53,927 nucleotides of DNA, from NCBI RefSeq assembly GCF_001194135.2, contig NC_069001.1, positions 37,227,090 to 37,281,016 on the forward strand. The letters are read 5' to 3'. This stretch comes from Octopus bimaculoides. Lineage: Eukaryota. The translations under genes and the position numbers were made by a program. A model generated the notes under the pieces. The model was given only the letters and a program-made list of their open reading frames with translations. It was not told where the DNA came from and did not search any database. The first letter of the stretch is position 1. Every line of letters starts with the position of its first letter. Of the stretch, positions 6,146 to 51,157 are shown one piece after another.

Positions 6146-6162
6146 CGGAGCATGCGCATAGA
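6146..6162 (-). promoter_or_regulatory. Core-promoter-like ATGCGCATGCTCC motif of Z1 (NRF1-like)
   Basis: A homologous motif sits upstream of every gene in the cluster. Confidence 0.55.
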
Positions 6163-6734
6163 GATGTTTACAGTCTTGTATTGGTGTGTGTATGAGCACG
6201 TGTACATATAATAATAATAAACTTAGACGCCCAGTACACTACAACCCATCAGAAAAGGTAACCAAAAATGCATGTACAGTACATGGGCATAGAACTTCCA
6301 CTAGTAATGTATAAAAAGTCAGACAAGTGAATGAGTTATTAAATTTAAAAAAAAAAAAAGGAATATCAAGTGCAGTGTTGGCGAAGTTTGGGGAGCGTGG
6401 AAATTTGGAAGGATGTAGTGACCTGGCAGCTAACGACTGATGCCGTTGGTTTATTCTCTGCTTCAGTATTTCTAGGCGTGAAAAAGCGTTTCCTAAAGTC
6501 ATGAGTACTGTTATTTTTTGATTTTATAACCATGTCCATGGGCTTATACATGTGTGGGACTGTGTGTGTATTCTTACCTGCATCTGTATCTAACGTCAAA
6601 GAGAAAACGCAGAAGAAAATGTGCAAACTGGGGAAAAACATGAATACATCAGGAAAAGCAATATTACATATGCAAGAAAAGGCAAATATATAAAAATGAG
6701 AAAATGACAGACACTTAGGGTAAGTTCATATATA

Positions 6735-7555
6735 TACAGTCTGATTGGCCAGGGTCCAACAAGACAATGTGGATGTGGCGGAAATGTGCATCTAGTGTGC
6801 TGAAGGTGCCATGGGTGCACGAATGTGTTTATGCACCTTTGACTTTTGGCAGTGGAAGCAAATTCAAGAGTAGTCAGTGATGTCACATCTCATTTTCAGC
6901 CAGAAAAATCTAGCTGTAGTGTGCTTCACTGAGGCTCCAGGATGTGATAGATTATGCAGGGCTTCAAAAAAAAGCTCGTCTATGGGTCTCTATGATGAAG
7001 GGACAAGGCAAATCTGTTGATATATCACACAGGATCTGCCTGTCAGAGGTTTGCACAAGCAAGTATTTGAATTTGCACATCGCAAATTCAGAAGTTATCT
7101 TATTTTGAGTCTAGAGGGGGTTGCTCAACAGACAAAATATTCAGGACAATATCCACAGCGGATACTAAAGAATTGGCAAATAGGACAATGCATCTGCAGC
7201 AGTGTTTTGTGCATCAGAGATGTGTTGAATATCATTGGTGAAATGTAATATAAAGTGAAGGTATCTAGTCTTACTTGGTGAGTACTTTTCTGGCTTGGAC
7301 TGCAAAGCAAAAGTAAGAGGTTTGCAAATGTTGCTGATGAAATTGCTGTAAAACAGAACTAGTTGCAGTGTCTGAAGCATCAACCACAAGCGAAAGCTTT
7401 GCATCGGGTGTGCAATGAGACATGCTTTAGAAAGCTCATGTTTTAGAGTGTCAAAAGTTTTGGTTTGAGTAGGAGTTACCAGAGGTGGAAGCAGTTTGTT
7501 AAGTTTTACCTTCCCCTCAAAGCAACATAGAGATTTCAGTTCAGCAGCCCATCTG
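6735..7555 (-). mobile_element. Ty3/Gypsy LTR retrotransposon pol relic (RT-RNaseH link, integrase HHCC and core start)
   Basis: FDTLKHELSKACLIAHP, NTAADALS, ALHNLSHPG..CFHCQKSKVHKHIRAP and LVGPWP motifs across frameshifts. Confidence 0.85.
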
Positions 7556-7739
7556 TAAGTGTGTGTGTGTGAGGGAGAGAACATTGCAAAGAATGAATGA
7601 AATAAACATGAAATGAAAAAATTGTATAAATAAAAGGACATTACTACAGATGTATACGTCCCCGACTTTGTTACTTCATAACATCCAGAAATATGAATAC
7701 TTTTTAACAAAATTTTCTACAAATACTGTGTAGGTATAT

Positions 7740-8420
7740 CGATTGTTGAAAGATAACTCTTCAGCTGTACTTGAGCCATGGTTGTCCAACATTTGTGTAT
7801 ATTATCAAACTGGCTATACATGAAAACTTTAGGTATTCTTTTGTTAGTCATTCTGATGACATGACCAGCCCAGCATAGTTGTAATTGCATAAGAAAAATT
7901 TCAGTTTCTAGTTTTACACTATATGAAGAGGTTGGGATTTGATATTTTGCCCCCTAGAGTGTAACCACAAATCGTCTGAAGAGAACGTTCATCAAAGATG
8001 TCTAGTTGGTTGATGTGCAATCTATATGTAGTCTAAGATTCTAATTCTTAAGTTTGGTCAGTACAACAGCTTTGTAGACCTGTATCTTTGTGTCTACTTT
8101 TATATCCCTCTCATTCTATAGGCAATAATGAAGTTTGCCAAATGCACTGGTAGCTTTCCCTATATGATTGATTATCTCATCAGCAGAGGCATTTGAACTC
8201 ACCATATAATCAAGATTTGTGAATGATTTCACATACATGAGATCCTTTTTGTCAACCTTTATATGGGTGTCTGGGAAATGGTGGATTTTGTTTTGCACCT
8301 CATATTTCTTTGGGCATAGAGCACAACTGGTGGATCACCGCATTTTTTCCCCCTGCTGATGGTAAGCCTGAGAGATTTGCTTGCTACAGAGAAAGTGATT
8401 TACATTTTCTGGCCTTCCTC
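7740..8420 (-). mobile_element. RTE/BovB-like LINE relic (RT C-terminal half)
   Basis: HIGKATSAFGKL, KVDTKIQVYKAVVLT and LCWAGHVIRM..RIPK motifs with stops. Confidence 0.8.
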
Positions 8421-9518
8421 AAGAAAGAGATGTTTCTACAGGAGCAGTATCATCAGTGAAAAAAATCTTGAATGATTATGTGATCAGCTTTGAACTGTTG
8501 ATGGTTGAAGAATCCACCACTAGTCCAAATTTGGAATTTAACACCTGTGTTGTTTTCACTAAAGGTATACTTGAGCACCACTGAGAAAAATAGTGCAACA
8601 ACTGGAGCCGAGACATAACCTTGTTTTGTGTCATTTGTCTGTATAACTTTATTTGAAGCTGTTGAGCTCGTCTCACTTGATATCGGCTAGAGTCATTATG
8701 TTTATTTTTTTGTATTCAGAAATTCATTCTGTTCTTCTTTGTTTCACAATAGTCAACTAATATTTTTATGTTCATAAATTCTGATCATATTTTCTCCTTT
8801 TTCTCACTAGTAAATCTAATCAATATATGAAATATGCTATGTGTCAACAATATATATTTAATATGCTATACGTATTTGTATTTATAGTCATTTTATTGTC
8901 AAACATTTTATTTCATATCTTCCACTACTACCTTTTATAGTCAACGTACTGAAAGTTATCATGTATTCAACTCTAGCCTATTTACACTTTATTTAAGTGG
9001 AACAAAAAACAGAAATATTTTAATAACAGGTTGAAAATTTAGAAGGCGAAGCTGTTTTGATACTTCCTCATATCTATATAAGAAATATTAATGTTCAGGA
9101 ACTTTAGCAGTGAATGTGAATAACAGTGATTATAATATACCTTTGTAGCTCTTGCACAGAATGTGGCATAGATATTGTAAATGTGCTGATTTTGCTTAAG
9201 CTAAACCTTCTGTCCTTTGAAAACCTCTAGAAATTGTATGTAACCTGTTTGTAAGATCATGTACTCATGGGTAAATATGCAAATATTATAGTAGCTTTGA
9301 ATACATATAGAACATTTGTGAAATTAGGTATAGCATTTATTATAGAAAATGACAATGTAGAATAACGAGTGAATCATTGACTATGACATATACATATTAA
9401 AAGTAATCAAAACCTGTATATCTGGAGAATAATTTTCTTCGTTACTAGTTATTTTGGCATTTTTATTGATGTTCTCATACTCAAACTAGCAACATTCATC
9501 ATGCACAATTTTCAATAC

Positions 9519-9587
<69 letters not shown>
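9519..9587. repeat. (TA)n microsatellite
   Basis: Direct reading of the sequence. Confidence 0.95.
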
Positions 9588-9589
<2 letters not shown>

Positions 9590-10630: not shown

Positions 10631-11947
10631 TTATGGTTTATCTCGTGTATGAATATGTTCGTGTTTAGTTAAGCCACTTTTTCGACAGAATGATTTACCA
10701 CAGATATCACAGGGATATGGCCTCTCCCCAGTATGAATGCGTTTGTGTGTATTTAAGTCACTACTTTGAGAGAATGATTTACCACAAATGTCACAGTGAT
10801 ATGGCTTTTCTCCTGTGTGAGTGCGTATGTGTATAGTTAAATCACTACGTAAGGCAAAAGCTTTACCACACACATCACACAGATAAGGTTTTCCCCCAGT
10901 ATGAATATACTTGTGAGTAGTTAAGTGTCCTCTTCTAGAGAATGATTTACCACAGATATCACAGTGATATGGTGTGTCACCAGTATGAATATATTTGTGA
11001 GTAGTTAAGTCACTACTTTGGGAGAATGATTTACCACAGATATCACAGTGATATGGTTTCTCTCCTGTATGAATGCGTTTGTGTACTGTTACTTTACTCT
11101 TTGAAGTGAATGATTTACCACAAATATCACAAGAATATGGTTTCTCTCCTGTATGCATGCGTTTGTGTATAGTTAAGGCATTACTATGAGAGAATGTTTT
11201 ACCACAGATATCACAGTGATGTGGTTTCTCTCCTGTATGAACACGTATGTGAGTAGTTAAATCACCACTTCGAGAGAATAATTTACCACAAATATCACAA
11301 TGATATGGTGTTTCCCCTGTATGAATGCTTTTATGCATAGTTAAGAGATCAACATGAGAGAATGATTTACCACAAATATCACACTGAAATGGCTTTTCTC
11401 CTGTATGAGTGCTTTTGTGTACAGTTAAGGCATTTCTTTCAGTGAATGATTTGCTACAAATATCACAGGGATATGGCTTCTTTCCTGTATGAATATGTTT
11501 GTGTTTTGTTAAATTACTTCTTCCAGAAAACGATCTCCCACAAACATCACATTGATATGGTTTTTCACCAGTGTGAATGCGGTTGTGTACATCTAAGCCA
11601 CTCTTTGTAGAGGACAATTTACCACAGACATCACAACGATATGGTTTCTCGCCTGTGTGTACACGTATGTGTTTAGTTAGGGCATACACTTTAGAAAATG
11701 ATTTACCACAGACATCACAATGATATGGCTTCTCTCCTGTAGTGTGAGCAGTTCTGGGACTTGCTTGAGAGATTGACATACTAAAGTTATCACTGTGAGT
11801 AGATGTTTCTCCTTTTTCTTGCAGTGTCTTACTAGGAAAATCAATCCTTTCAGACTCAGTGTTAATTTCAATAGATGTTTCAGTTTTTTTAATCGAAATG
11901 TTAACAATATCACTGTGTCTATACGTTTCTTCTGTCTCTTGCTCCAT
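10631..11947 (-). CDS. C2H2 zinc-finger protein Z2: 13 fingers, paralogue of Z1, N-terminally truncated
   Basis: 438-aa ORF collinear finger-for-finger with Z1; it starts at the Met equivalent to the internal EMKQ Met of Z1. Confidence 0.9.
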
Positions 11948-12151: not shown

Positions 12152-12549
12152 ATTCATCTAAAGATTGTCTGAAATAGTAAAAAAATAGCATAAGATATAA
12201 GAGATCCAGCAGAAAATGTTCATATATTTGCAAATACAATCTTTTATTTGATCAGTTAACATTTACTTTTTAATTTTCTATTAAAATTACATCATACAAC
12301 CTTGTGTGAAGTCTACATATTTACAGATTACAGCAATTTGAGACTGTGTAACACTATATTTGTTAAACTGCAGTAATTCATTACATGTGGGAAGAGGCTT
12401 ATCAAAGACCTTAAACTCACGACAACACACAAAACCAACGGAATGATAAACAATAGTAATAACAAGTCTACTCAAGATATATCACAGACTACAGCTACAC
12501 TTTCAGATTGTCTAACAAATATGTTATCTAGCTCAATTATTCCCGATTG

Positions 12550-13177: not shown

Positions 13178-13910
13178 TGGATGTGTTAAAAGAAAATTAC
13201 AAGGTCAATTTGGAACATCAGGTAATTTTTCATGTCATATTTACACTAATTTATGCTGAGGAATTCTATACCAAAGAGAAAGACATCTGTTCATTTTTTG
13301 GCTGCTATAGTGTTCCGTGAAAATTTGTTTCAATTCTTATAATGTAATGTGGACATTACGAATCTCACTCTTACTTTTTGCAGTTTTCAAAATCAATATC
13401 GATAAATCTGATCGTTATCTTCGTGCAAAAACACAAAATATTCTACACAGAATTTTTAAAGCTTTAAACTAGAAGATAATTAACAGCAATAACCCTAAAA
13501 CTAAATGTTAAGCGTATTAAAAACTACCCCCTAATTATAAACAAGGTGGACACTGCACAGGATCAAAAGGAAAATATGGAAGTGAAATGTTAAATACAAG
13601 GATCACCAAACATAATATTGATGGAAGAAGAAAAGCACTGAAAGAAAGAAGAAGACTATATGCACAAAAAATACCTCGTATAAATCACAGCTATTGTTAG
13701 GAAGTCAGTGGTGGTGGTCATTGGTAGGAAGGCAATAGCGTTGATGAATGGTGTGTCATATCGTTAAATGTGCGTGTGTATACATGTATAGTTAATATGT
13801 CTACTTTTTCTTGATAATTATATATTTCAAGCTAAATATACTATTATTTAGAAAGCCTTTATTCGATCAAAATATGAACTATATTCCTTTGTCAATTGCA
13901 GTCTGTAAGT

Positions 13911-13925
13911 TGGAGCATGCGCATA
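13911..13925 (-). promoter_or_regulatory. Core-promoter-like ATGCGCATGCTCC motif of Z2
   Basis: Homologous to the Z1 motif, with the same flanks. Confidence 0.55.
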
Positions 13926-14504
13926 CAGAGATAGTTATTAGCGAAGGTTATATCCTGGATCGGGGTGTGTATAGACACATGTATGTCTGGGAATACATTA
14001 ACACTTTAAAATGATGGGGATAGAGTTTTATCAAAATTTTCGAAAATCTATGATTTCTTATCACCTCGCTCCCCGGGGCCCTCAAGATGGACTTATTCAA
14101 AAAATTTTTGCCTGACGCATTTAAAAATAAAACAATTGTCGAAATCCATGGAAACCCAGCAATTCATAAGTTCCTCGTTTTCCACTTAGTAAAAATCACG
14201 ACAGGTATAGATTAACATTACTGTGCGCTCATTACGTTAAGCATATTAATTTCAATGTGTGTGTGTGCATACATACATACATATATATATATAAATAGAC
14301 TGACAGACAGATAGATAGATAGACTGATTGATTGTAGGGACACCGTATTTTGTTATGCAACAAAGTATATTGAAGTCTTTATAAGTCAGTACTGCGTCCT
14401 ACCGTGTTAGTGCGATTCAATCATGTTTTGGCAATACCTACACAGGTGTGTTTTAAGAAATTGCCTGCTAACTTTCAAAGTGAGTGAATTACGATTACTC
14501 TGTT

Positions 14505-16722: not shown

Positions 16723-17002
16723 CTAACATTACTCCAAATTTGTAAACATTAAACGCTATTAACTCTTTATTTATTGATTTATGGCGAAAATGAATTTCAT
16801 GTTAATGATAATTTTACAAAACTTCATCAACATGCCATATACGAAATCAATTGGAAAAGAAATTGAAAAGCGGCAGATTCCACATCCGAACAAATTAGTT
16901 TTCGTAGCACTGGATGACTTCCGATTCTCTTCTGTATGAAAGCCATATTCGTGTATGTTGAAGCTATGTCAAGGTGACACAATTCGTTACTGACACTTTG
17001 CC

Positions 17003-17024
17003 ATGCGCATGTTCAGCCGGATAT
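17003..17024 (+). promoter_or_regulatory. ATGCGCATG-TTCAG-CCGGAT core-promoter-like motif of Z3
   Basis: Same spacing as the six other plus-strand copies. Confidence 0.55.
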
Positions 17025-17983
17025 CGACTTCATGCTGCTATTGAAAATGAAAACGTAGAGATCGTTAAACGGATAAAACTTAGAAGAATAATTTATTTGG
17101 CTTCAAACCTAAAGTGTAATTACATTTCCCTATTATGTGTGTGTGTGTGCAGCATTAAAACTTCTCCATTCACCAATACATATGACCACCACCATTGACT
17201 TCCTAACAACAGTCGTGATTTATACGAGGCATTTTTTGTTCCAAGTTATGTTTTCATTCAGTTGTTTTTCTTCTATGAATGATGATCTTTGTATTTACAT
17301 GTCACTTCCTCATTGTTGTTTTGACACTGCAGTGTCCACCTTGTTTATAATTAGAAGATATTTTTAATACAATTATCATTTATTATTACTGTTACATATC
17401 ATCCTCTTTTAAGGTTTAAAGATAATATATTAACTGAATATCTTGGATTACCTTCCTTCATCAATAGAGTTTCTATGTCACGAGTTAGCAACTTTTCTGC
17501 ATCTACAGATAAGTTTAGCGTATTGATGAGTGGACAGTGGGCTAAAAAATAGGTGAAATATGAGAATTATCTATTCAGATTCATTTAGTTACATTTTTTT
17601 TAATGTCAGATCAATGAATGATGCCCACTGGAAAAATATTTTGCTTTAACGGAGGTTTGTTAATGTCTCTATGAGTGAAAAATACGACGACATATTGGCT
17701 GGCGATGTAATTACATTTTGTGACAATGAAGTTATGTACAAAGTATTTAACAGCTATGAATTTAAAGTCAATTTTAACATAGTGTCTTTGAATATATATA
17801 TATATATATATATATGGCTATGGTCAATATACATTCATTGTCTGGAATATGTTCAAGACTGATTTTAATAAATTTACAAAGGAGTTTCTACCATTTTTAG
17901 ATATCAACAGAGATTGAAGTTGAGGGAAATTTCTTGGTAGAAAGTAAAAATAAAATATAAGAATTGGTGAAAAAAGAACAATT

Positions 17984-18940
17984 ATGGAAAGCAAATTATG
18001 TGAGACACCAATTATGATTAAGACAGAGCCTGAAAGCATTGATTTTCCTGATGAGATGGTGAAAGAGATGGGAAAAACGTCAAATCATTGTGATACCTGT
18101 GGTAAATCATTCACTCGAAGAGGTCCTTTCATTAGGCATAAGTGCATTCAAGTAGAGGAAAAGTCTCATCATTGTGATATCTGTGGTGAATCATTCTCTC
18201 AAAGGAAAGTTTTAACTACTCACAAACGTATTCATACTGGAGAAAAGCCATATCAATGTAATATTTGTGGTAATTCATTTTCTCGAAGTAGAAACTTAAC
18301 TACTCATATACGTATTCATACAGGAGAAAAGCCATATCACTGTGATATATGTGGCAAATCATTTGCTCGGAGTGATCAGTTAAATGTACATAAATACATT
18401 CATACAGGAGGGCAGCCATATCACTGTGATATCTGTGGTAAATCAATGTCTTCAAATAGTAAATTAACAATACATAAACGCTTTCACACTGGGGAGAAGC
18501 CATTTCAGTGTGATATCTGTGGTAAATCATTCTCTATTAGTAGTCATTTAACTACTCACAAATATATTCATACAGGAAAGAAGCCATATTGCTGTGATAT
18601 CTGTGGTAAATCATTCTCAGTAGGAAGTAATTTAACTACTCACAGGCGAATTCATACTGGAGAAAAGCCATATCACTGTGACATCTGTGGCAAAACCTTA
18701 TCTGATTCAGGTAACTTAACCAGTCACAAACGTATTCATACAGGAGAGAAACGATACCTCTGTGATATCTGTGGTAAATCATTTTCTCACAGTGGACATT
18801 TAACTGCACACAAATGCATTCACACCGGAGAGAAGTCATATTGCTGTGATATCTGTGGTAAATCATTTTCTCGTAGAGAAGTATTAACTGTACACAAACA
18901 TATTCATATAGGTGATAAGCCATTAAACTGCAATGTTTGA
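17984..18940 (+). CDS. C2H2 zinc-finger protein Z3: 10 fingers (first lacks the final His), truncated by a TGA at a Cys codon
   Basis: 318-aa ORF with leader [21 protein letters not shown]. Confidence 0.85.
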
Positions 18941-22590: not shown

Positions 22591-23631
22591 TATTACCAAT
22601 GTATCAGATTTTGTAAATATTATTTCATTCTCACGCCCATTCGTCGGCGATGTATGTAACTCAAAAAACAAAATTCAGCTAAATATAATATTCTATCAAG
22701 TTTCTTTGAAAGAAAGAAAATGGTTCACAGTATAAAACATTATATATTTTTTATTTACTTTTATTAATTCTTCGATATAATTCATATGATTTTCATCATA
22801 AACAAGCAAAAATACATTGTTCAGAAAATCATCTGCTGAAATTTTCACAAAATATCAGGTCATTAAGAATGATGTAACGGAGCGGTTACCAGTATGTAGC
22901 AGTTGTTGTCAATGTTTTTCTGTTTTCATATTCGTTTGCCACATACTTGTTAACACCCACCAGGCTGGTTAATTAATTTTTTTGTTCCCGGATGAGGATC
23001 TGTATATTGATCGATGATGTTAACTCCAAGAAAGAAAGACAGTAGCCGAAGTTGTAGATAACATTTATTTCTCAATTACATATAATCAAAGCTAAACCAC
23101 GACGGGCAGGCATGTATAAAAACAGTTAGAAAGCATATGAAGTAACACGAGTTATAGTTTCTTGTAAGTGTAGCGTTGAACTTACATATTCCCATGTTCC
23201 TTGTCATTGTAGCAGCAGTAACTAAAGTGATGCTGTTGAAACGAAAGTGAGTGATTGAGAAAGTAAGAGAGGGGTGCTCAGGACAACTGTATTGGTGAAT
23301 TTCATAGCTGTCCCTCTATGACATTCTGTCAAGACGGTATTTCAAACCGGTCGGCCTGCTCTCCGTCGTTTGCCCTCACTAACTGATTTTTTTTGCCTTG
23401 GAGAATACTGGTGTTTATGACTATGCAGACTAGCTAGAAGTTCACTAATCATTTCATCCATTTGGTGGATGTATACATCCGGCAACAAACTACTACAAGA
23501 TGTCAACGACGTTGGTGGAAGTTGGCTTCTTTCTCAGTTTCACAATGTGCGAAGACTAATATCGATATCTTAAGTAATATATTACATATATGAGATCCTC
23601 AACATCTTTCAATCGATGCTAACATTCCACG

Positions 23632-34375: not shown

Positions 34376-34915
34376 GCAGGGTACCACTACCCTTCTTTAG
34401 TAGTACCTGATGTGTGTGTTACACAATAGCCATGTGAAGCTGTAATTTGTATGTATGTAGACTTTACACAACGTTGTATCATGTAATTTTAAAAATCAGT
34501 TAAACTTCACTGTTCAATGATTGATGTAAATGTTTATATATACAGTTTATTCAATATAGAAAGATAATTTTCTGCTGTTGAATATTGAGCTTCACCTCTA
34601 TCTTATGTTTCTCTATTTCAGATATAACAGTATCTGCATAAAAGAATTTCTTTTTACTTTAAATTCACCATAATTTATCATCTAAAGACTGGGATTATTG
34701 AATTCTAATTTTTTTCTACTTCACTGTCTCTAATATTTTCAGGAATAATTTGAATACTTTATTATACTTGGACACTTTTTCCAAAGGAGTTTCTACCATC
34801 TTCAGAAATCAACAGAGATTGAAGGAAATCTCTTTCAGGAATTAGTGAGAAACTAAAAGTTATGGATAATACATTATGTGAAAATCCATTTACACTTCAG
34901 GCATAGTCTGAAAAC

Positions 34916-35965
34916 ATGAATTTTGCAAATGAAATGCCAAAAGAGACAGGAAAAAAGTCAAATGAGTGTGATATCTGTGGTAAATCATTTGCACGCAGAA
35001 ACTATTTAACTGCTCACAAACGTATTCATACAGGGGAGAAGCCACATCAGTGTAATATTTGTGGTAAATCATTTATTTCAACTGGTCACTTAACTACTCA
35101 TGTACGTACACATACAGGAGAGAGGCCTTATCACTGTGATATCTGTGGTAAATCATATGCTCGTAGTAATCAATTAACTGTACATAAATACATTCATACA
35201 GGAGGGCAGCCATTTCATTGTGATATCTGTGGTAAATCTATGTCTTCAAAGAGTAAATTAACAGTACACAAACGCTTTCATACTGGAGAGAAACCATTTC
35301 ATTGTGATATTTGTGGTAAATCATTCTCTATTAGTAGTCACTTAACTACTCACAAATATATGCATACAGGAGAGAAGCCATATCACTGTGATATCTGTGG
35401 TAAATCATTCTCTGTAGGAAGTAACCTAAATACTCACAAACGACTTCATACAGGAGAAAAACCATACCACTGTGATATCTGTGGGAAAACATTATCTGAT
35501 CAAGGCAACTTAAATAGTCACAAACGTACTCATACAGGAGAGAAACGATACCTCTGTGATATTTGTGGTAAATCATTCTCTGATAGTAGGTCTTTAACTG
35601 CACACAAACGCAGTCACACTGGAGAAAAGCCATATCACTGTGAAATCTGTGGTAAATCATTTGCAACCACACGTACAGTAACTGTTCACCAACGTATTCA
35701 TACAGGACACAAGTCGTATTCATGCGATATCTGTGGTAAGTCATTTCTTCGCAGAGAATCATTATTTATTCACAAACGCATACATACAGGTGAGAAACCA
35801 TATCACTGTGATACCTGTGGTAAATCATTCACAGTATCAACTACTTTGACTACACACAAATGCAGACATACAAGGGAGAAACCATATCACTGTGATATCT
35901 GTGGTAAAGCATTTTCTCAAAAACGTCACTTCACTGCCCATGCATCTACTCATACAGGTAAATAA
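34916..35965 (+). CDS. C2H2 zinc-finger protein Z6: 12 fingers; the ancestral ATG at 34862 is interrupted by TAG at 34904
   Basis: 349-aa ORF from an internal Met; the upstream 14 codons align with the Z4 leader. Confidence 0.75.
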   Translation: MNFANEMPKETGKKSNECDICGKSFARRNYLTAHKRIHTGEKPHQCNICGKSFISTGHLTTHVRTHTGERPYHCDICGKSYARSNQLTVHKYIHTGGQPFHCDICGKSMSSKSKLTVHKRFHTGEKPFHCDICGKSFSISSHLTTHKYMHTGEKPYHCDICGKSFSVGSNLNTHKRLHTGEKPYHCDICGKTLSDQGNLNSHKRTHTGEKRYLCDICGKSFSDSRSLTAHKRSHTGEKPYHCEICGKSFATTRTVTVHQRIHTGHKSYSCDICGKSFLRRESLFIHKRIHTGEKPYHCDTCGKSFTVSTTLTTHKCRHTREKPYHCDICGKAFSQKRHFTAHASTHTGK

Positions 35966-39460: not shown

Positions 39461-40599
39461 GTGTAAGTTTACATTTTAGGCTTCTGCATATTGAGTAAGG
39501 CCATTTCCCCGAGGACACCAGGGTCTAATCTTAAGGAAAATTTTATAAGGGTTTAAAGTTTGATTATTTTTACTCAATCAGAAAAGATTTGAAGACTGGC
39601 ATTTTCTGCATGAAAGCAAAACTTTAAGATGATGAATTTTTATCAAACAAAACATTACGTCAATGAATGTCCTAAGATACTTTGAAATTTTAATAAGTTT
39701 TAATGAATGAAGTCACGAAACGGTTGAACAGCCATGTAAATGATTTAAAAAGGAAAAAAATCCTCAACGAAATTTTTTGACATACTGCAAAAGAAACTAC
39801 GTTAATATTGGGGTTTAGGGTCAGTCTGACAAGTGGATGACCTGGGGTTAATCAATTGGTAACATTTTTCTAAAATTCCTCTCTGAAAACTTTTTTTGAC
39901 AAATTATAAAAAAAAAATTAATAAATAAACTTAAAGAAACTCTACGTTAGGCATGTAAACATGAACTGAACTGAAACTACAGCCTAACGTGTTTGAATTT
40001 TCGCTTTAAAAGATGTATAGTTTACTGTAAAGCGAAAATTCAAAAACGAAAGTCAGTATATGAGTGCTCGTTAAAGAAAATACACGTAGTAGTTGTGGTA
40101 GTGTTAAACAGACAATAGCTTCGCTTGTTACTATACAAACAGGCACCAATGTGTTGGATGCTTTCCAGTCGCTGAAATTATTTGCAAAATTTAAAAGCTA
40201 TTGAGTTATTATTAATTTAATTAGCATACAAAATTGAAGCAAATACGAAAACAACTGGAACAAAATTTTAAAAAATAGAAAACTGTAGCAGCAATAGAAA
40301 AGATCTGGACTCCTTTTGATTTGCAATTTAATTTTCTTCATTATTTATTTCTTGGGGAGAAAATGAGTGCAATTTTTATCATCAGCCTGTAAAACTACAT
40401 TTTCTGGAGATTTGAACGACTTATAGTGTTTCGTTGAAATTGAACATCAGAACCACTAGAAGCAGATGCAAGAAACAACTACAACATATCGACAACGATC
40501 GTTGAAATTGGATTCATTATCCGTGTTACAACTTGTGAATACCCAAAAGCGGTGTCTTTCATCTGTTTAGCATCTCATTCCACTGCTAACATTCTGCCA

Positions 40600-40621
40600 A
40601 TGCGCATGATCAACCGGAAGT
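40600..40621 (+). promoter_or_regulatory. ATGCGCATG-ATCAA-CCGGAAGT motif of Z7, with adjacent CCAAT
   Basis: Conserved motif; donor at 40856, acceptor at 42069-42070, uORF at 42080-42094. Confidence 0.6.
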
Positions 40622-41068
40622 TGACTTCGACGTTCACTCATCAGATGCCAGCTTTGTATTACGAATTGAATCGCATATGTATATAAGATAATTTATTAGC
40701 TTGACGCATAAAGCAGTGAAGAATTAATCATATTTATCTCATATCTTCTAATGAATTTATCTATAATGTTATACATTGTATATACGCAATGGGAGTAATT
40801 TCAGCATCCTGACCATCGTCACTGATTTGCTCTTTATAGCTGTGATTCATACGAGGTATTTTTGTTGATTCTTTTCTCATTCAAACGTCGTTTCTACTTT
40901 CACAACGCCTCTATTTGATTGATCTGTCATATATTTCGCGACATTCTTGAAAACAATCAGTCTTTGAAACACAAGTCTGCACAGTTAGCACTGACGTAGG
41001 GATATAAACAACGTCATATCACTTTTCAGGCCAGAGAACTGTCACCGTCCACTATTGTGTGTTCACCA

Positions 41069-41950: not shown

Positions 41951-42376
41951 AGTCGCTATATATTTTTATATATGCAGGCATCAAACAAGAGTGTACGATG
42001 TAGTTTTAATAATTAAAATTTAACTTCAATCGTTGATGTAAATTCTTATACTATTTCTCTACTATTTCAGAAGTAACAGATGGTATTGGTATAGAAGAAT
42101 TTATTTACTTCAGATTCGTCATCAATATTTCTCATCATTTAAATACTAAAGAATGATGTTATTTCAAATAGAAATGATTGGTGGGATGACTGTGAAATAT
42201 TTCTTGTGAACTGTGATTATTATATTATTAACAGTGTAACTTTTTCTTTCACTATCTGGAATATGTTCAAGAGTGAGCTTCTGCCATCAACAGATATCAA
42301 TAAACATGGAATTTGAAGGAAATTTTTAAGTAGAAAATATGAATAAAACATAGCAATTAGTGAGAAAAGAACAGTA

Positions 42377-43558
42377 ATGGAAAATACATTACGTGAGACC
42401 CCAATTAAAACAGAGTCTGAAGGCATTGATTTTCCTGATGAGATGCTGAAGGTGATGGAAAAAACATCATACCACTGTGGTATATGTGGTAAATCATATT
42501 CTGAGAGAGGAACATTGACTAAACACAAACGTATTCATACGGGAGAGAAACTGTATCAGTGTAATATCTGTGGTAAATCATTCATTTCAAGTAATTACTT
42601 AACTATTCATATACGCACTCATACAGGAGAGAAGCCATATCAGTGTGATATCTGTGGTAAATCATTCGCTCACAGTTCTCATTTAAAAGTCCATAAATAC
42701 ATTCATACAGGAGGGCAGCCATGCCATTGTGATATCTGTGGTAAATCTATGTCTTCAAAGAGTAAATTAACAGTACACAAACGCTTTCATACTGGAGAGA
42801 AACCATTTCATTGTGATATTTGTGGTAAATCATTCTCTATTAGTAGTCACTTAACTACTCACAAATATATGCATACAGGAGAGAAGCCATATCACTGTGA
42901 TATCTGTGGTAAATCATTCTCTGTAGGAAGTAACCTAAATACTCACAAACGACTTCATACAGGAGAAAAACCATACCACTGTGACATCTGTGGGAAAACA
43001 TTATCTGATCAAGGTAACTTAACTAGTCATAAACGTATTCATACAGGTGAGAAACGATACCTCTGTGATATTTGTGGTAAATCATTCTCTGATAGTAGGT
43101 CTTTAACTGCACACAAACGCAATCACACTGGAGAAAAGCCATATCACTGTGAAATCTGCGGTAAAGCGTTCAGCACCACACGTCAAGTAACTGTTCACCA
43201 ACATATTCATACAGGAGACAAGTCATATTCATGCGATATCTGTGGTAAGTCATTTCCTCGTAATGAATCATTATTTGTTCACAAACGCATACACACAGGT
43301 GAGAAGCCATACCACTGTGATATCTGTGGTAAATCATTCACAGTATCAACTACTTTGACTACACACAAACGCAGTCATACAGGAGAGAAACCATATCACT
43401 GTGATACCTGTGGTAAATCATTCACTACAACAAGTTACCTAACTAAGCACAAACTCATTCACACGCGAGATACGCCATATCATTGTGATATCTGTGGTAA
43501 ATCATTTTCTCAAAAACGTCACTTCACTGCCCATGCATCTACTCATACAGGTAAATAA
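42377..43558 (+). CDS. C2H2 zinc-finger protein Z7: 13 fingers
   Basis: 393-aa intact ORF with leader [19 protein letters not shown]. Confidence 0.95.
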
Positions 43559-44493: not shown

Positions 44494-45861
44494 GGGATCT
44501 AGTTTTTTTTTTCATTTGCAAAATTTGCATTTTTTAAAAGATAGTAAAAAATCTGAAAATCAGCTATAATAAAGTTTTCCAGTGTAATTGCTATGAAGGT
44601 ATGATGTTTTGGAGGGAAAAGTTTCAGAGGTTTAAAAAAAACAGGGTATCTATAGCCAATAGTGAGACAGAAATTTTCTGTTTAGCGAAGCAGTGTCAAC
44701 TTTAAGGTGAAATTTATAGTTTATCGTCTGCGAAATGACCTCTTCATTCCAGGTTTCTAAATAAATAGAAATACCTAATTAAATCAACATGTATAATCTT
44801 ATAGCTTCTTTTTCTCTTCATTGATTGTATGTTTTTATTATTTTTAAAATTTATATTAATATATTTGTCTGCATGTGTTTACTTTATGCATATTTCAGTA
44901 TTATGTATACCCGTCCTGTATTTGTGTACATTATTAATATATAAGTGCGTACGTGTGTGTCCGTGAAAAAGAGGCGTCTGTCTCCAAAACTTGAAAGTTG
45001 AGTAAAGTTTTCATGTTAGGATTTGTAAACTACGGTAAGAATAATACTGGTCAACAAAGAATTTGTCCCCCCAAAATAATACCTGTTTTTGCATACAGAA
45101 TTCAAAAATAATGTCAAATTATCTGTATTAAGTTCATAAATTCCATTCACCTTCATAATGCCAAGAAAATTTATAAACGTCGCAAACTACTTTTGCTATA
45201 TACGTAAAATATCATGACAATTGACAAAAACATCTATAACAAAATTCTAATTGATAAATATAGATTTTTATTAAAACAAAAACTACGTGGGTGAAGTAAT
45301 TCTCGTGGTGTGCAAAATCAACACGTGGGTGAAACAACGCAACTTGCGGTTGTCATGGTAACAAGCTGTTAATGCCTCGCTGTCTGCTGATTGGCTAAAA
45401 TTACCCAAATTTCCCAACTTTGATTACAAATAACATCAGATTTTTTAATTTACGAGATAAAATAATTGGTTGGTCGTAATCAAAATTCAGAATTGCATTG
45501 ATACACCATAATTTGAAGCAAAATAAAAGGTGGCTCATTTTGCGAACGAGAAAGACTAGATCCATGTTTTTGAAGTGAAAGTTCAGTATGTTAGTGCTTG
45601 TTAAAGAAAATATCCGTTGTGGTACTATTAAGCAGACAATAGCTTCACTTGAGAAAAATGAGTGCGATTTTCGTCATCAGTATGCAAAGTTACATTTTCT
45701 GAAGATTTGAATGACTTATAGTGTTTGGTTGAAATTTAACATCAGAACCACTAGAAGCAGATGCAAGAAACAACTACAACATATCGACTACGATCGTTGA
45801 AGTTGGATTCATTATCCGTGTTACAACTTGCGAACACCCAAAAGCGGTGTCTTGGGCATTC

Positions 45862-47202
45862 ATGTGTTATTTCGTCTGTTTAGCATCCCATTCTGCCAAT
45901 GCGCATGATCACCCGGAAGTTGACTTCGACGTTCACCCATCAGATGACATCTTTATATTTAAAACAGAGTCTGAAAGCATTGATTTTCCTGATGAGATGC
46001 CGAAGGTGATGGAAAAAACATCATACCAGTGTGGCATATGTGGTAAATCATATTCTGAAAAAGGAACATTGACTAAACACAAACGTATTCATACGGGAGA
46101 GAAACCATACCACTGTAATATCTGTGGTAAATCATTTGCTAGAAGTAATGACTTAACAATACACAAACGTATTCATACTGGTGAGAAACCATATCACTGT
46201 GATATCTGTGGTAAATCATTTGCTCACAGTTCTCATTTAAGTGTCCATAAATACATTCATACAGGAGGGCAGCCATACCATTGTGATATCTGTGGTAAAT
46301 CATTCACTGCAAAGAGTAAATTAACAGTACACAAACGCTTTCACACTGGGGAGAAGCCATTTCAATGTGATATTTGTGGTAAATCATTTTCTATAAGGAG
46401 TCATTTAACAACTCACAAATATATTCATACAGGAGTGAAACCATATCACTGTGATATCTGTGGTAAATCTTTCTCTGCAAATAGCCAATTAACTATACAC
46501 AAACGCATTCATACAGGAGAAAAGCCGTATCACTGTGATATCTGTGGCAAACCATTGTCTGACCCCCGTAACTTAGCTAGTCACAAACGTATTCATACTG
46601 GAGAGAAACGATATCTCTGTGATACTTGTGGTAAATCATTTTCTCACAGTGGACAATTAACTGCTCACAAATGCATTCATACCGGAGAAAAGCCATATCC
46701 CTGTGAAATCTGTGGTAAATCATACTCTGTCAAAAGTGAATTAATAGTTCACAAACGCATTCATACAGGAGACAAACCTTATTCCTGTGACATCTGTGGC
46801 AAGTCATTTCCTCGTAGAGACACGTTACCTATCCACAAGCGCACTCATACAGGTGAGAAGCCATATCACTGTGATATCTGTGGTAAATCATTCACAATAT
46901 TAAGTAATTTAACTATCCACAAACGCAGTCATACAGGGGAGAAGCCATACTGTTGCGATATCTGTGGTAAATCATATACTACATCAAGTGGTTTAACTAC
47001 ACACAAACACATTCACACAGGAGTGAAACCATATGCTTGTGATATCTGTGGTAAATCATTTACTGTTACAAGTACCTTAACTAAACATAAACGTATTCAC
47101 ACAGGAGAGAAACCATATCATTGTGATGTTTGTGGTAAATCCTTCACTTCTACAAGTAGCTTAACGAAACACAAACGCATTCACACACGAGATATGCCAT
47201 AG
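45862..47202 (+). CDS. C2H2 zinc-finger protein Z8: 14 fingers; start uncertain (ATG 45862 or 45997)
   Basis: Open frame; the listed 45847 start is GTG; the ancestral MENT.. start is deleted; TAG at 47200. Confidence 0.75.
45899..45920 (+). promoter_or_regulatory. ATGCGCATG-ATCAC-CCGGAAGT motif of Z8, fused almost directly to the coding exon
   Basis: 45650-45958 aligns with 40360-40660 upstream of Z7. Confidence 0.6.
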
Positions 47203-49419: not shown

Positions 49420-49858
49420 TACATGAAGGAGCCATACCCAATGACTGGTATAGTAGCACCATAGTCAACTGCTACAAAGGTAAATGTGATGCATTAGATA
49501 GGAAAAATTATCATGGAGAGGGACATAGCCCAACTAATTAGGGAGAGATTTAGTTCAAATTGAGATACAGTGTGGATTTGTGCCAGGGAGAAGCACCACT
49601 GATGCTATAGTTCTGGTGAGATAGCTGCAGGAGAAATTCCTAGCCAAAGATAGACCTCTGTACTTGGTTTTCGTTGACATGGAGAAAGACTTTGACAGAG
49701 TCCTTCAATCTGGTGGTCACTGCAGACACTAAGGATAGATGAGTGGATGGTGAGAGCTGTACAAGCCATGTACAGGGATGCTGTCAGTAAGGTGAGAGTT
49801 GGCAACAAGTATAGTGAAGAATTCTCTGTAAAAGTAGGGGTTCGCCAAGGATCAGTAC
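49420..49858 (+). mobile_element. RTE LINE RT fragment
   Basis: IPNDWYSSTIVNCYKGK..LQEKFLAKDRPLYLVFVDMEK.FDRV..GVRQGSVL. Confidence 0.9.
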
Positions 49859-50062
49859 TGCATTAGCACACTTCGATCTACACATAATTTTTCTTTTTTT
49901 TTACTCCAGCCGCAGCTTGAAATTTTTTTTTTTTTTTGGCGGTTCAACAAGTTTGTCTGTTGTCGGCATACTTAACATTTCACATTTTTTTTTTCCTCCA
50001 CAGAGGAAGTATTCATTTTAAACAAAAATTAACTAAAATGGGCAACTCACCCCCCCCCCCCC

Positions 50063-50251
50063 NNNNNNNNNNNNNNNNNNNNNNNNNNNNNNNNNNNNNN
50101 NNNNNNNNNNNNNNNNNNNNNNNNNNNNNNNNNNNNNNNNNNNNNNNNNNNNNNNNNNNNNNNNNNNNNNNNNNNNNNNNNNNNNNNNNNNNNNNNNNNN
50201 NNNNNNNNNNNNNNNNNNNNNNNNNNNNNNNNNNNNNNNNNNNNNNNNNNN
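50063..50251. other. Assembly gap (N run)
   Basis: N characters. Confidence 1.
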
Positions 50252-50279
50252 CACCGTCTGCCACACGCAGAACATCACA

Positions 50280-50301
50280 ACGCGCATATTCAACCGGAAG
50301 T
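50280..50301 (+). promoter_or_regulatory. ACGCGCATA-TTCAA-CCGGAAGT motif of Z9
   Basis: Conserved motif; donor at 50668, acceptor at 52800-52801, uORF at 52811-52825. Confidence 0.55.
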
Positions 50302-51157
50302 GGAATCCGGCCTTCGGCTACAAACGTTACCCCTGTTCTGCGGTGAGTTTTTGACCCATTGAAATTTTTCAAATTTATTTGTTTGATGCATAAGCTAACA
50401 AGTCATATTTATCTCATGTGCTATAATATATTTATATTCAATATTGTAACACACACACACACACACGCATATATATATAATTATGACAGAAAAGGGAAAT
50501 AATGAAAGCTTCTAACAATGCAGACAGTTTTACAAAAAATGTTTCTATTTCGGGCGCAAAAGTATATCTTTAAAAGAAAGCAATCCAAGATATGTATACA
50601 CACAGTAATTTTCTCCAATAGCACGACCACCATTCCTAGTTCCTAAAAAAGCTGTGATTCATACGAGGTATACTTATTGGGTTTTTTCTCATTGAAACAT
50701 CGTCTCTACTTTCATCACTGTAATGTGTCTTACATGATAATCTGTTATAAAACGTGTTACTTTAAAACAAACTGACTTCTTTGTCAAACAGGATTGACCT
50801 ATGACTGAACAACCACAGATTGCTTTTTCTGGACATAGGGGCTAATGTTATCGTCCTTTGGTGTGTAGTTAGGACAGTATGAGGGTGGAACTGTAATCTG
50901 TGACTTAATCTAGATCTGTCGTTATCGTGTTGATTTCTTATAGTTACTGTCAGTTATGGGCCTTGATAAGGCTTTCTCGAATTTTACTGCAGTTCCCTTG
51001 ATATGTATACACACACACACACACACACACCCAGTAGTCCCCCGGTATTTGCAGGGGTTACGTTTCTACAACACCCGTGAATAATGAAAAACAGCGAATA
51101 TGGGACGCGGTCCATAAAAATGCCTATAAATGTGAAAATATAACGTAATTTATATAC

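What the first reader, a model, noticed from the sequence alone, without database searches (positions are those of the whole stretch)
6146..50669. One promoter cassette copied in front of all nine genes: TGCGCATG-n5-CCGGAAG plus a conserved donor
Seen: the motif at 17003, 23632, 29034, 33290, 40600, 45899 and 50280 with fixed 5-nt spacing, and ATGCGCATGCTCC on the minus strand at ~6151 and ~13916. About 200-400 bp downstream lies TGATT(C/T)ATACGAG|GTAT (5922, 13673, 23831, 29195, 33532, 40856, 50668; GC variant at 17229). These CpG-containing motifs persist while the surrounding DNA has diverged and been invaded by TEs. Established: TGCGCATGCGCA is the NRF1/Ewg site and CCGGAAGT the ETS/GABP site, both typical of TATA-less promoters. 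Inference: the genes are DNA-level duplicates of a two-exon unit and are co-regulated by an NRF1+ETS composite element.
Basis: partly seen in the sequence, partly recalled or inferred. Interest (0 to 1): 0.7.

Follow-up and report, generated by a model that had tools for sequence, protein, structure and literature searches.

The report
Shared promoter block in octopus zinc-finger array
A tandem array of zinc-finger genes on an Octopus bimaculoides chromosome has kept one short block about 1-3 kb upstream of each gene (an ETS-like and an NRF1-like site) plus a splice-donor block while the DNA between them decayed. This is most likely the inherited promoter and first-intron boundary of a duplicated gene unit, which is real but ordinary.

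Summary
The window is Octopus bimaculoides chromosome CM046621.1 and carries nine tandem C2H2 zinc-finger genes (g1-g9).

- **Composite motif.** TGCGCATG-n5-CCGGAAG occurs seven times at up to 2 mismatches, against 0 expected. All seven are on the + strand, upstream of a + strand gene. It is exact in only three copies.
- **Minus-strand genes.** g1 and g2, and a tenth copy just left of the window, share only ATGCGCATGCTCC and have no ETS site.
- **Conservation.** In an eight-gene alignment the motif (0.82 identity) and the donor block (0.85) are the sharpest peaks in the first kilobase of the unit. Upstream DNA scores 0.31-0.45 and exon-1 interior and intron score 0.42-0.56.
- **Acceptor.** A third conserved block ends in TTTCAG about 240-320 nt before the ATG and is shared with Octopus vulgaris zinc-finger genes. 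This fits a noncoding exon 1 plus one coding exon.
- **Limits.** The composite motif is absent from five other octopod zinc-finger loci, so it is specific to this array. The NRF1 reading rests on one TGCGCA hexamer. No transcript or chromatin data were reachable, so the transcription start, the splicing and co-regulation remain inferred.

Verdict: a real, probably selected proximal promoter and splice-site set, and a new member of a known kind. Interest is low to moderate.

The parts
6114..6163 (-). g1 upstream island, A-type: TCTATGCGCATGCTCCGACTTCAG, no ETS site
13879..13928 (-). g2 upstream island, A-type: TGTATGCGCATGCTCCAACTT, no ETS site
16999..17048 (+). g3 upstream island, B-type; ETS half weakened (CCGGATA); CATGCGCATG is a 10-nt palindrome here
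23628..23677 (+). g4 upstream island, B-type (CCGGAAC, 1 mismatch)
29030..29079 (+). g5 upstream island, B-type, exact composite motif
33286..33335 (+). g6 upstream island, B-type (TACGCATA, 2 mismatches; ETS half exact)
40596..40645 (+). g7 upstream island, B-type, exact composite motif with ACCGGAAGT
45895..45944 (+). g8 upstream island, B-type, exact. It is joined directly to the coding exon by a ~1.74 kb deletion relative to g7
50276..50325 (+). g9 upstream island, B-type (CGCGCATA, 2 mismatches); begins 25 nt after assembly gap 50063-50251
5910..5950 (-). g1 donor block TGATTTATACAAG|GTAT; intron starts at 5923
13661..13701 (-). g2 donor block TGATTTATACGAG|GTAT; intron starts at 13674
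17199..17240 (+). g3 donor block TGATTTATACGAG|GCAT (GC in place of GT; intron would start at 17229)
23801..23842 (+). g4 donor block TGATTCATAAAAG|GTAT; intron starts at 23831
29185..29206 (+). g5 donor, only ACGAG|GTATTTTT kept because the exon-side block is deleted; intron starts at 29195
33502..33543 (+). g6 donor block TGATTCATACTAG|GTAC; intron starts at 33532
40826..40867 (+). g7 donor block TGATTCATACGAG|GTAT; intron starts at 40856
50638..50679 (+). g9 donor block TGATTCATACGAG|GTAT; intron starts at 50668
4118..4157 (-). g1 acceptor block (pyrimidine tract + TTTCAG); exon 2 would start at 4117
12169..12208 (-). g2 acceptor block; exon 2 would start at 12168
24705..24744 (+). g4 acceptor block; exon 2 would start at 24745
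29947..29986 (+). g5 acceptor block; exon 2 would start at 29987 and runs into gap 30067-30380
34582..34621 (+). g6 acceptor block; exon 2 would start at 34622
42031..42070 (+). g7 acceptor block; exon 2 would start at 42071. This block matches ~70% upstream of four O. vulgaris zinc-finger genes
52762..52801 (+). g9 acceptor block; exon 2 would start at 52802
2404..3852 (-). g1 coding ORF, 482 aa, 13 C2H2 fingers
10631..11947 (-). g2 coding ORF, 438 aa, 13 fingers
17984..18940 (+). g3 coding ORF, 318 aa, 9 fingers. It is cut short by a stop, and decayed finger repeats continue to ~19420
24981..26168 (+). g4 coding ORF, 395 aa, 13 fingers
30381..31493 (+). g5 coding ORF as far as it is read (370 aa, 13 fingers); the start lies in the gap
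34862..35965 (+). g6 coding region. The ancestral ATG at 34862 is followed by TAG at codon 15; the open ORF runs from 34916 (349 aa, 12 fingers)
42377..43558 (+). g7 coding ORF, 393 aa, 13 fingers
45847..47202 (+). g8 open frame, 14 fingers; the ancestral ATG and first ~7 codons are deleted
53125..53927 (+). g9 coding exon, runs off the window into a further assembly gap; one finger lacks the residues DIC

Best explanation
**What it is.** The window is a tandem array of C2H2 zinc-finger genes in Octopus bimaculoides. The array arose by repeated DNA-level duplication of one gene unit, with one inversion between g2 and g3. The unit consists of:
- a ~45-nt proximal promoter island;
- a noncoding first exon of roughly 130-350 nt;
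- an intron of 0.8-2.1 kb;
- a second exon holding ~240-320 nt of 5' leader, the whole coding sequence and the 3' end.

**What has been kept.** Neutral DNA of the unit has decayed almost to background and has taken up interspersed repeats. Three short blocks have been held by purifying selection: the promoter island, the exon 1 / intron 1 donor (AG|GTAT with its exon-side TGATTYATAC), and the acceptor (pyrimidine tract + TTTCAG).

**The two island types.**
- B-type (g3-g9): ATGCGCATGTTCARCCGGAAGTTGAATTCGGYCTTCA. This is one palindromic TGCGCA hexamer (NRF1/Ewg/P3A2-like half site) and, 5 nt on, a class-I ETS site. An initiator-like YTTCA follows about 30 nt after the start of the island.
- A-type (g0-g2): the hexamer and the YTTCA are present, but the ~11 nt with the ETS site are missing.

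**How it most likely works.** It works like the TATA-less promoters of many animal genes. Ubiquitous activators bound a few tens of bases upstream of the start recruit RNA polymerase II. Transcription starts just downstream of the island, and the leader exon is spliced to the coding exon.

**Shown versus inferred.** Shown: the positions, the orientation, the conservation above flanks, and the duplicate nature of the units. Inferred: promoter activity, the start site, use of the splice sites, and the identity of the bound factors.
For: - **Source.** The window is O. bimaculoides GCA_001194135.2, CM046621.1. The annotated genes there are single-exon coding sequences identical to the ORFs.
- **Motif placement.** There are 7 composite hits against 0 expected, and none elsewhere in the window. 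Each is on the strand of the next gene, 0.98-2.8 kb before its ATG.
- **Conservation profile of eight genes.** Motif 0.82, donor 0.85 and acceptor block 0.77-0.80. Upstream DNA is 0.31-0.45, exon-1 interior 0.47-0.56 and intron 0.42-0.52.
- **Island against flanks.** Island identity is 0.68 against flanks at 0.40-0.50 and shuffled controls at 0.40.
- **Divergence.** Motif and donor cells differ from the column majority 3 times less often than neighbouring aligned DNA (Fisher p about 1e-5 to 1e-7; cells are not independent).
- **CpG.** Density is 6.9 per 100 nt in the island against 1.54 in the window, where CpG o/e is 0.48.
- **Invariant bases in the seven B-type copies.** These are CGCAT, TCA and CCGGA.
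- **Donor.** G|GT is kept in 7 of 8 copies, and it survives in g5 although the bases just before it were deleted.
- **Acceptor.** The TTTCAG block is present in 7 of 8 genes. Conservation stays raised from there to the ATG (0.55-0.78). The block is shared with four O. vulgaris zinc-finger genes.
- **Coding lesions track motif changes.** The copies with two motif changes also carry coding lesions: g3 has a stop with decayed fingers and a GC donor, g6 has a stop at codon 15, and g9 has a broken finger. The intact g7 has the exact motif and the intact g4 has a single mismatch. This fits joint relaxation of constraint.
- **Published background.** In human promoter assays NRF1 motifs act almost only at promoters and ETS motifs preferentially so (PMC8920891).
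Against: - No transcript, cap or chromatin evidence could be obtained. Look-ups of five window proteins (g1, g3, g4, g7, g8) returned only the genome record, with no RNA-derived contigs.
- The NRF1 palindrome is incomplete, so another factor may read ATGCGCAT.
- The ETS half is dispensable in three copies.
- Long-tract gene conversion does occur in this array: the g6 and g7 3' halves are 94-100% identical. Concerted evolution therefore contributes to similarity somewhere in the array.
- The copies fall into only four or five independent lineages, so the statistics overstate the number of independent observations.
- A second acceptor-like site (CTTCAG|ATATCAAC, ~100 nt before the ATG) is also conserved within the window. 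Exon structure is therefore not settled.
- Only a small share of octopus CpGs are methylated, and methylation is scant in promoters (PMC9476566). CpG retention is thus weaker evidence than it would be in a vertebrate.
Confidence: 0.7

Rival explanations
1. The islands have no function. They are leftover homology from recent duplication, or are kept alike by gene conversion between copies.
For: The array is young enough for some noncoding DNA to align at about 70%. Gene conversion or unequal exchange clearly acts here: the g6 and g7 3' halves and 3' flanks are 94-100% identical while their 5' coding parts are 68-73%.
Against: The islands are 20-45 nt long and are flanked on both sides by homologous DNA that has decayed to 0.42-0.56 identity. 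The conversion seen here is a tract of more than 1 kb, not a micro-tract. The same short blocks stand out in every lineage, including the A/B split, where coding DNA is only 72-75% identical. The blocks are CpG-rich in CpG-poor DNA.
Confidence: 0.1
2. The blocks are functional but are read wrongly. The first island could be an upstream or downstream regulatory element (enhancer, insulator or 5'-leader element) rather than the core promoter. The 'donor' block could be a transcription-factor site rather than a splice site; TGATTYAT fits the PBX-HOX form TGATNNAT (recalled from memory).
For: A TATA-like run (TCATATTTAT) lies ~115-125 nt after the motif in g6, g7 and g9 and could place the start further downstream. 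Conservation at the donor covers ~15 exon-side bases, more than a splice site needs. A further conserved intron block lies ~130-150 nt after the donor.
Against: The invariant part of the second block is G|GT(A), and it survives in g5 after the TGATTCATA part was deleted. It is paired with a conserved acceptor downstream. TATA-like runs are common in DNA with 36% G+C, and that stretch is barely above background (0.55).
Confidence: 0.15
3. The island is the promoter of a mobile element (for example a solo LTR or SINE) that was captured once and then duplicated together with the gene.
For: Interspersed repeats are frequent in the window: at least 5 kb of non-exon sequence matches unrelated loci of other Octopus species.
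Against: None of the repeat matches covers an island, a donor or an exon 1. The composite motif is absent from about 108 kb of other octopod zinc-finger loci. No transposon protein domain was found in the intergenic ORFs. The sample of other DNA is small, so this is weak evidence.
Confidence: 0.05

Closest known systems
TATA-less animal promoters driven by NRF1 and ETS/GABP-type sites
   Same: A GCGCA-containing element and a CCGGAAGT element lie close together, in fixed orientation, shortly upstream of a putative start. There is no consistent TATA box, and CpG is locally enriched. In human assays NRF1 motifs act almost only at promoters and ETS motifs preferentially so (PMC8920891).
   Different: Only one TGCGCA hexamer is present instead of the GCGCATGCGC palindrome. 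Three bases in the 5-nt spacer (TCA) are invariant as well. Three copies work, or at least persist, without the ETS half. Nothing is known of the octopus factors.
Clustered protocadherin promoters with their conserved sequence element (CSE)
   Same: In a tandem array, each unit is preceded by its own promoter carrying one short conserved element (PMC3333863).
   Different: Protocadherin variable exons are spliced to shared constant exons, and the CSE is a CTCF site used for promoter choice. Here every unit is a complete gene with its own 3' end, and the element looks like an activator site. Promoter choice is not indicated by anything seen.
Zebrafish chromosome 4 zinc-finger gene arrays with shared promoter architecture
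   Same: Hundreds of tandem zinc-finger genes share one of two promoter types (TATA 'sharp peak' or TATA-less 'broad peak') inherited through duplication. This is summarised in PMC10547256, citing Hadzhiev et al. 2019 and 2023.
   Different: In zebrafish the classes are defined by mapped transcription starts and timing at genome activation. Here there are no start-site or expression data, and the array sampled has ten genes.
Cephalopod C2H2 zinc-finger expansions as described so far
   Same: The same gene family and the same tandem organisation. The array belongs to the octopus-lineage expansions (PMC12513265).
   Different: The C2H2-expansion study I searched (PMC12513265) deals with phylogeny and expression and contains no mention of 'promoter', 'motif', 'exon' or 'upstream'. 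My literature searches found no paper describing such elements.

Membership tests
RNA polymerase II proximal promoter of a duplicated gene unit | Lies upstream of, and in the same orientation as, each gene copy | tested here: met
   All 9 islands (plus g0) are on the strand of the next ORF, 0.98-2.8 kb before the ATG, or ~50 nt in the deleted g8.
RNA polymerase II proximal promoter of a duplicated gene unit | More conserved than neighbouring non-coding DNA | tested here: met
   Identity is 0.82 against 0.31-0.56. 9% of cells are divergent against 27-39%.
RNA polymerase II proximal promoter of a duplicated gene unit | Transcripts start at or just downstream of it; chromatin is open there | not testable with these tools
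   No RNA-derived contigs were found for five window proteins. No CAGE or ATAC data are held.
NRF1 / Ewg / P3A2 binding site | Palindrome GCGCATGCGC, i.e. two TGCGCA hexamers in tandem (consensus recalled from memory) | tested here: not met
   The first hexamer TGCGCA is exact in 8 of 10 copies. The second is TGTTCA, TGATCA or TATTCA (B-type) or TGCTCC (A-type). A single half site may still bind, so the functional claim is open.
NRF1 / Ewg / P3A2 binding site | Bound by the octopus NRF1 orthologue | not testable with these tools
   No binding data exist, and the presence of the orthologue in the octopus genome was not checked.
ETS class I site | Core GGA(A/T) within (A)CCGGAAGT (consensus recalled from memory) | tested here: met
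   CCGGAAG is exact in 5 of 7 B-type copies, with CCGGAAC in g4 and CCGGATA in g3. CCGGA is invariant. The site is absent from g0, g1 and g2.
GT-AG intron (exon 1 / intron 1 / exon 2) | G|GT donor at a homologous position in the copies | tested here: met
   7 of 8 copies have GT and g3 has GC. g8 has lost the region.
GT-AG intron (exon 1 / intron 1 / exon 2) | Matching pyrimidine tract + AG acceptor downstream | tested here: met
   TTTCAG is preceded by a pyrimidine-rich run in g1, g2, g4, g5, g6, g7 and g9. It is not found in g3. The block is conserved in O. vulgaris relatives.
GT-AG intron (exon 1 / intron 1 / exon 2) | Spliced transcripts joining the two sites | not testable with these tools
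   No transcript data could be reached.
Protocadherin-type promoter-choice cluster | Variable first exons spliced to shared constant exons | tested here: not met
   Each unit has its own complete coding exon, stop codon and homologous 3' flank.
Family-wide octopod C2H2 promoter element | Present upstream of zinc-finger genes in other clusters and species | tested here: not met
   The composite motif, the A-type motif and the donor block are absent from L002 (O. sinensis), L003, L007, L008 (O. vulgaris) and L009 (Argonauta hians). Together these are about 108 kb with at least eight zinc-finger genes. The sample is small, and promoters more than 10 kb away would be missed.

The most novel reading that the evidence does not exclude
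The array is split into two regulatory classes by the presence (g3-g9) or absence (g0-g2) of the ETS half. Within a class the near-identical promoters would be used in a mutually exclusive or stochastic way, in the manner of clustered protocadherins. Individual neurons would then express different zinc-finger paralogues. That would reconcile a shared promoter with the published finding that paralogues fall into different co-expression modules (PMC12513265).
Probability: 0.05. Interest if true: 0.65.

Novelty: new member of a known kind. Interest (0 to 1): 0.3.

Why it matters
The C2H2 zinc-finger expansion is one of the two hallmark gene-family expansions of the octopus genome. The C2H2-expansion study I searched does not mention promoters, motifs or exon structure, and my searches found no paper that does.

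This array gives a concrete, testable candidate: a 45-nt island and a leader-exon structure. It also offers natural variants:
- three copies without the ETS site;
- one copy with the island fused to the coding exon;
- three copies with a weakened motif together with coding lesions.

The practical value is a handle for reporter assays, for start-site annotation, and for asking whether paralogues diverge in expression through distal elements rather than their promoters. It does not change how such arrays are thought to evolve. Duplicated genes carrying their promoters with them is expected.

Tried and rejected
1. **Orthologue searches.** I tried to find orthologous arrays in other species for phylogenetic footprinting. 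All were swamped by generic multi-finger proteins, or were limited to targets shorter than about 1.75 times the query. No orthologue with the N-terminal region was returned. The window's own proteins are not in the collection.
2. **Transcript contigs.** Exact-protein look-ups for g1, g3, g4, g7 and g8 returned only the genome record. Two O. bimaculoides fragments from UniRef were not on record.
3. **Walking beyond the window.** To the left, one more A-type island (g0) was found. To the right, 3.3 kb held no further island and began with another assembly gap.
4. **RNA genes.** Rfam and tRNA scans of the window found nothing, so the islands are not known RNA genes.
5. **Transposon domains.** A Pfam scan of ten intergenic ORFs found no transposon domain. 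Repeat content was shown instead by matches to unrelated octopod loci.
6. **The g5 gene model.** The annotated g5 model starts at 26872, far upstream of the island. This is a 12-codon ATG...|GT patch that supplies a start for a gene whose real start lies in the gap. It is not evidence for an upstream exon.
7. **Micro-exon after the acceptor.** I considered a 12-nt micro-exon (CAG|ATATAACAGATG|GTAT). I dropped it because conservation continues about 100 nt past the acceptor in both species.
8. **Heat-shock-element or hairpin readings** of GAAGTTGAATTCGGCCTTC were considered by eye only and not pursued.

Full report
**Source and layout.** An exact-protein look-up places the window on Octopus bimaculoides GCA_001194135.2, chromosome CM046621.1, at about 37.227-37.281 Mb.

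The window holds nine C2H2 zinc-finger genes with 9-14 fingers each, recognisable as long ORFs:
- g1 2404-3852(-)
- g2 10631-11947(-)
- g3 17984-18940
- g4 24981-26168
- g5 30381-31493 (start hidden in a gap)
- g6 34916-35965
- g7 42377-43558
- g8 45847-47202
- g9 from 53125, running off the window

Coding exons are 72-88% identical at the DNA level. The public gene calls for these loci are single-exon coding sequences equal to the ORFs. G+C is 36% and CpG o/e is 0.48.

**Check of the observation.**
Shuffles give none, and 3 mismatches add nothing.
- Three copies are exact (g5, g7, g8). g4 has one change. g3, g6 and g9 have two.
- The - strand genes carry ATGCGCATGCTCC at 6151 and 13916, without CCGGAAG.
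- A look-up with 10 kb of flank shows a tenth copy of this second type 7.4 kb left of the window (g0).
- The donor motif gives seven hits against 0.28 expected. g5 keeps only ACGAG|GTATTTTT, g3 has GC for GT, and g8 has none.
- So the 'seen' part is correct, but the title ('all nine') overstates it.

**Assembly gaps, tested first.**
- Gap 30067-30380 sits inside g5, between its acceptor block and its coding exon. The flanks are collinear with g6 and g7. The missing length expected from those paralogues is about 235-295 nt against 314 N. The right edge reads in frame [11 protein letters not shown]..., as in g6. g5's ATG is therefore unread, and the listed TTG ORF start is an artefact.
- Gap 43920-44493 is intergenic.
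- Gap 50063-50251 ends 30 nt before the g9 motif. The motif is real sequence, but its upstream flank is unknown.
- The window also ends exactly at a fourth gap, inside g9.

**Is the motif more conserved than its surroundings?** I aligned the whole 5' region (400 nt before the motif to just past the ATG) of eight genes. g8 was left out as a recent copy of g7. Mean pairwise identity in 20-nt windows was:

| Region | Identity |
|---|---|
| Upstream of the motif | 0.31-0.45 |
| Motif | 0.82 |
| Exon-1 interior | 0.47-0.56 |
| Donor | 0.85 |
| Intron | 0.42-0.52 |
| Small intron block, ~130-150 nt after the donor | 0.72 |
| Block at g7 41961-42000 | 0.80 |
| Acceptor block, 42041-42080 | 0.77-0.80 |
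| From there to the ATG | 0.55-0.78 |

- A segment test gives 0.68 for -10..+40 against 0.40-0.50 for the flanks and 0.40 for shuffled sequences.
- Cells differing from the column majority are 9% in the motif and in the donor. They are 27-28% in exon-1 interior and intron, and 39% upstream.
- The Fisher p-values (1e-5 to 1e-7) treat cells as independent and the blocks were chosen after the fact. The copies form only four or five lineages (g3; g4/g5; g6/g9; g7/g8; g0-g2), so the p-values are generous. The contrast remains clear.
- Four lineage representatives (g3, g4, g6, g7) still share 16.5 of 20 motif bases on average. I counted this by hand from the sequences.
- The island has 6.9 CpG per 100 nt against 1.54 in the window. 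Less than 10% of octopus CpGs are methylated, and methylation is scant in promoters (PMC9476566). CpG retention is therefore supportive rather than decisive.

**Anatomy of the island.**
- B-type copies read ATGCGCATGTTCARCCGGAAGTTGAATTCGGYCTTCA. The bases invariant in all seven are CGCAT, TCA and CCGGA.
- ATGCGCAT is an 8-nt palindrome around one TGCGCA hexamer. The NRF1 consensus as I recall it is two such hexamers (GCGCATGCGC). Here the second is TGTTCA, TGATCA or TATTCA (B-type) or TGCTCC (A-type). The full site is not met, and 'NRF1' is only a lead. A C/EBP-like bZIP (TTGCGCAA, from memory) is a conceivable rival reader.
- The ETS half is a textbook class-I site (ACCGGAAGT in g6-g9).
- About 30 nt after the start of the island, most copies have YTTCA, which is initiator-like (TTCAGTC in g1).
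- A-type copies align as ATGCGCATGCTCC-GACTTCAG. They are about 11 nt shorter exactly where the ETS site would be. Whether the site was lost or gained cannot be told without an outgroup.

**Gene structure.**
- The donor block is CTTCCTAA..AGCTGTGATTCATACGAG|GTATTTTT.TTGATT.
- A conserved pyrimidine run ending in TTTCAG lies 0.8-2.1 kb further on and 240-320 nt before the ATG in seven genes.
- The same block, and about 100 nt after it, aligns at ~70% with sequence ~350 nt upstream of four zinc-finger genes on O. vulgaris chromosome OX597840.1. This is the strongest sign that it is a real exon boundary.
- A second acceptor-like site (CTTCAG|ATATCAAC, ~100 nt before the ATG) is conserved within the window but not in O. 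vulgaris.

**Is the cassette family-wide?** No, as far as could be sampled.
- The composite motif, the A-type motif and the donor block are all absent from O. sinensis L002, O. vulgaris L003, L007 and L008, and Argonauta hians L009.
- One O. vulgaris gene has a different CpG-rich upstream region with ACCGGAAGT (L008 9880-9915). ETS sites may therefore be common promoter elements in octopus.
- The cassette is a feature of this array, while the acceptor and leader structure is broader.

**Natural variants.**
- g8 is a recent copy of g7 (86% identity over 300 nt upstream). In g8 a ~1.74 kb deletion joins the island, 38 nt after the ETS site, to codon ~7 of the coding exon. The rest of exon 1, the intron, the acceptor and the ATG are removed.
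- g3 has a premature stop at 18940 followed by decayed fingers, a GC donor, no recognisable acceptor block, and GGAT in the ETS core.
- g6 has TAG at codon 15, two motif changes, and TAG|GTAC at the donor.
- g9 has two motif changes and a finger lacking DIC.
- The intact g7 has the exact motif, and the intact g4 has a single mismatch.
- The sample is small, but joint decay of promoter, splice sites and coding sequence is what a functional cassette predicts.

**Rivals.**
- **Neutral leftover or gene conversion.** Conversion does occur. g6 and g7 are 94-100% identical from about 35245 to 36326 (g7 ~42754-43919) although their 5' coding parts are 68-73% identical. That tract is over 1 kb long and ends at a gap. 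It does not explain 20-45-nt islands bounded by decayed homologous DNA in every lineage.
- **Misread function.** The start could lie elsewhere, and TGATTYAT could be a PBX-HOX-like site. This cannot be excluded without RNA data. Against it, G|GT survives in g5 after the TGATTCATA part was deleted.
- **Mobile-element origin.** This is unsupported. Repeat matches (at least 5 kb of the window) avoid the islands.

**Comparison with what is known.**
- The island works like the NRF1/ETS type of TATA-less promoter (PMC8920891).
- The array resembles zebrafish chromosome 4 zinc-finger genes, which share promoter types (PMC10547256). More loosely, it resembles protocadherin clusters with a conserved promoter element (PMC3333863). 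Unlike protocadherins, it has no shared constant exons.
- My searches found no description of promoter elements for cephalopod C2H2 arrays. One study reports that paralogues often sit in different co-expression modules (PMC12513265), which argues against simple co-regulation.

**Verdict.** Factor identities and co-regulation are unproven. It is a new member of a known kind, of low to moderate interest.

Noticed in passing
window 35245-36326 and ~42754-43919: The 3' halves of the g6 and g7 coding exons and their 3' flanks are 94-100% identical, while the 5' coding parts are 68-73% identical. This is either a recent conversion or unequal exchange of more than 1 kb, or an assembly problem, since the g7 copy ends at gap 43920.
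   Followed up: partly
window 45944-45975 (g8) compared with 40660-42405 (g7): g8 has a ~1.74 kb deletion that fuses the promoter island to the coding exon. It removes the donor, the intron, the acceptor, the ATG and about 7 codons. The frame stays open upstream through the island, and the public annotation starts g8 at an ATG at 45862, upstream of the motif.
   Followed up: partly
window 18938-19420: g3 is cut short by a stop codon. Five or so decayed and frame-shifted finger repeats follow. g3 also has a GC donor and lacks the acceptor block, so it is probably a decaying copy.
   Followed up: partly
window 34862-34918: g6 has TAG where the paralogues have GAG, at codon 15 of the ancestral reading frame. 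An in-frame ATG four codons later opens the listed ORF.
   Followed up: yes
window ~53540 (g9): One g9 finger reads FHCGKSFS instead of [11 protein letters not shown]. This is an in-frame loss of three codons that removes a zinc-binding cysteine.
   Followed up: no
window 40976-41015 (g7); homologous places in g4, g5, g6, g9: A conserved intron block, CAGAACTGACCTAGGGATATAAACAAC, lies ~130-150 nt after the donor (0.72 identity). Its function is unknown.
   Followed up: no
window 41961-42000 (g7); also in g1, g2, g6, g9: A conserved block, ATATGTAGACTTYACACAAGGTTGTATGATGTAATTTTAATA, lies ~100-150 nt before the acceptor. It is kept even between the A and B types (0.80). That is too far upstream for a branch point, and it remains unexplained.
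   Followed up: no
L007 5878-5980 and 17582-17739; L008 327-429 and 19156-19256 (O. vulgaris OX597840.1): The acceptor and leader block of the window genes is conserved (~70%) upstream of zinc-finger genes of another subfamily in another species. The leader-exon structure is therefore older than this array.
   Followed up: partly
L004 21220-21300 (7.4 kb left of the window, - strand of the window): A tenth island of the g1/g2 type (TCTATGCGCATGCTCCGACTTCAGCC) shows that the array continues to the left.
   Followed up: partly
window 5908-5914 (- strand): A second TGCGCATG lies 10 nt inside g1's intron, right after the donor (GTATATTTTGCGCATGTTGA). g2 has TGTGCATA at the same place.
   Followed up: no
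L008 9880-9915 (O. vulgaris): A CpG-rich stretch with ACCGGAAGT lies ~90 nt before the ATG and a G|GT donor of an annotated gene with a zinc-finger product. This is a different, ETS-containing promoter-like region.
   Followed up: no
window 37956-38276: A tandem repeat of a 42-nt unit (7.6 copies, 73% matches) lies between g6 and g7.
   Followed up: no
window 14495-14736, 5207-5259, 48186-48229, 51135-51487 and others: Short interspersed repeats match several unrelated loci of O. vulgaris and O. sinensis at 85-98% identity. Those at 51135-51487 lie in g9's unusually long first intron.
   Followed up: partly
window 26872-26907: The public gene model for g5 begins with a 12-codon ATG...|GT exon 2.1 kb upstream of the g5 island. 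It looks like an ab initio patch for the start codon hidden in the gap.
   Followed up: yes
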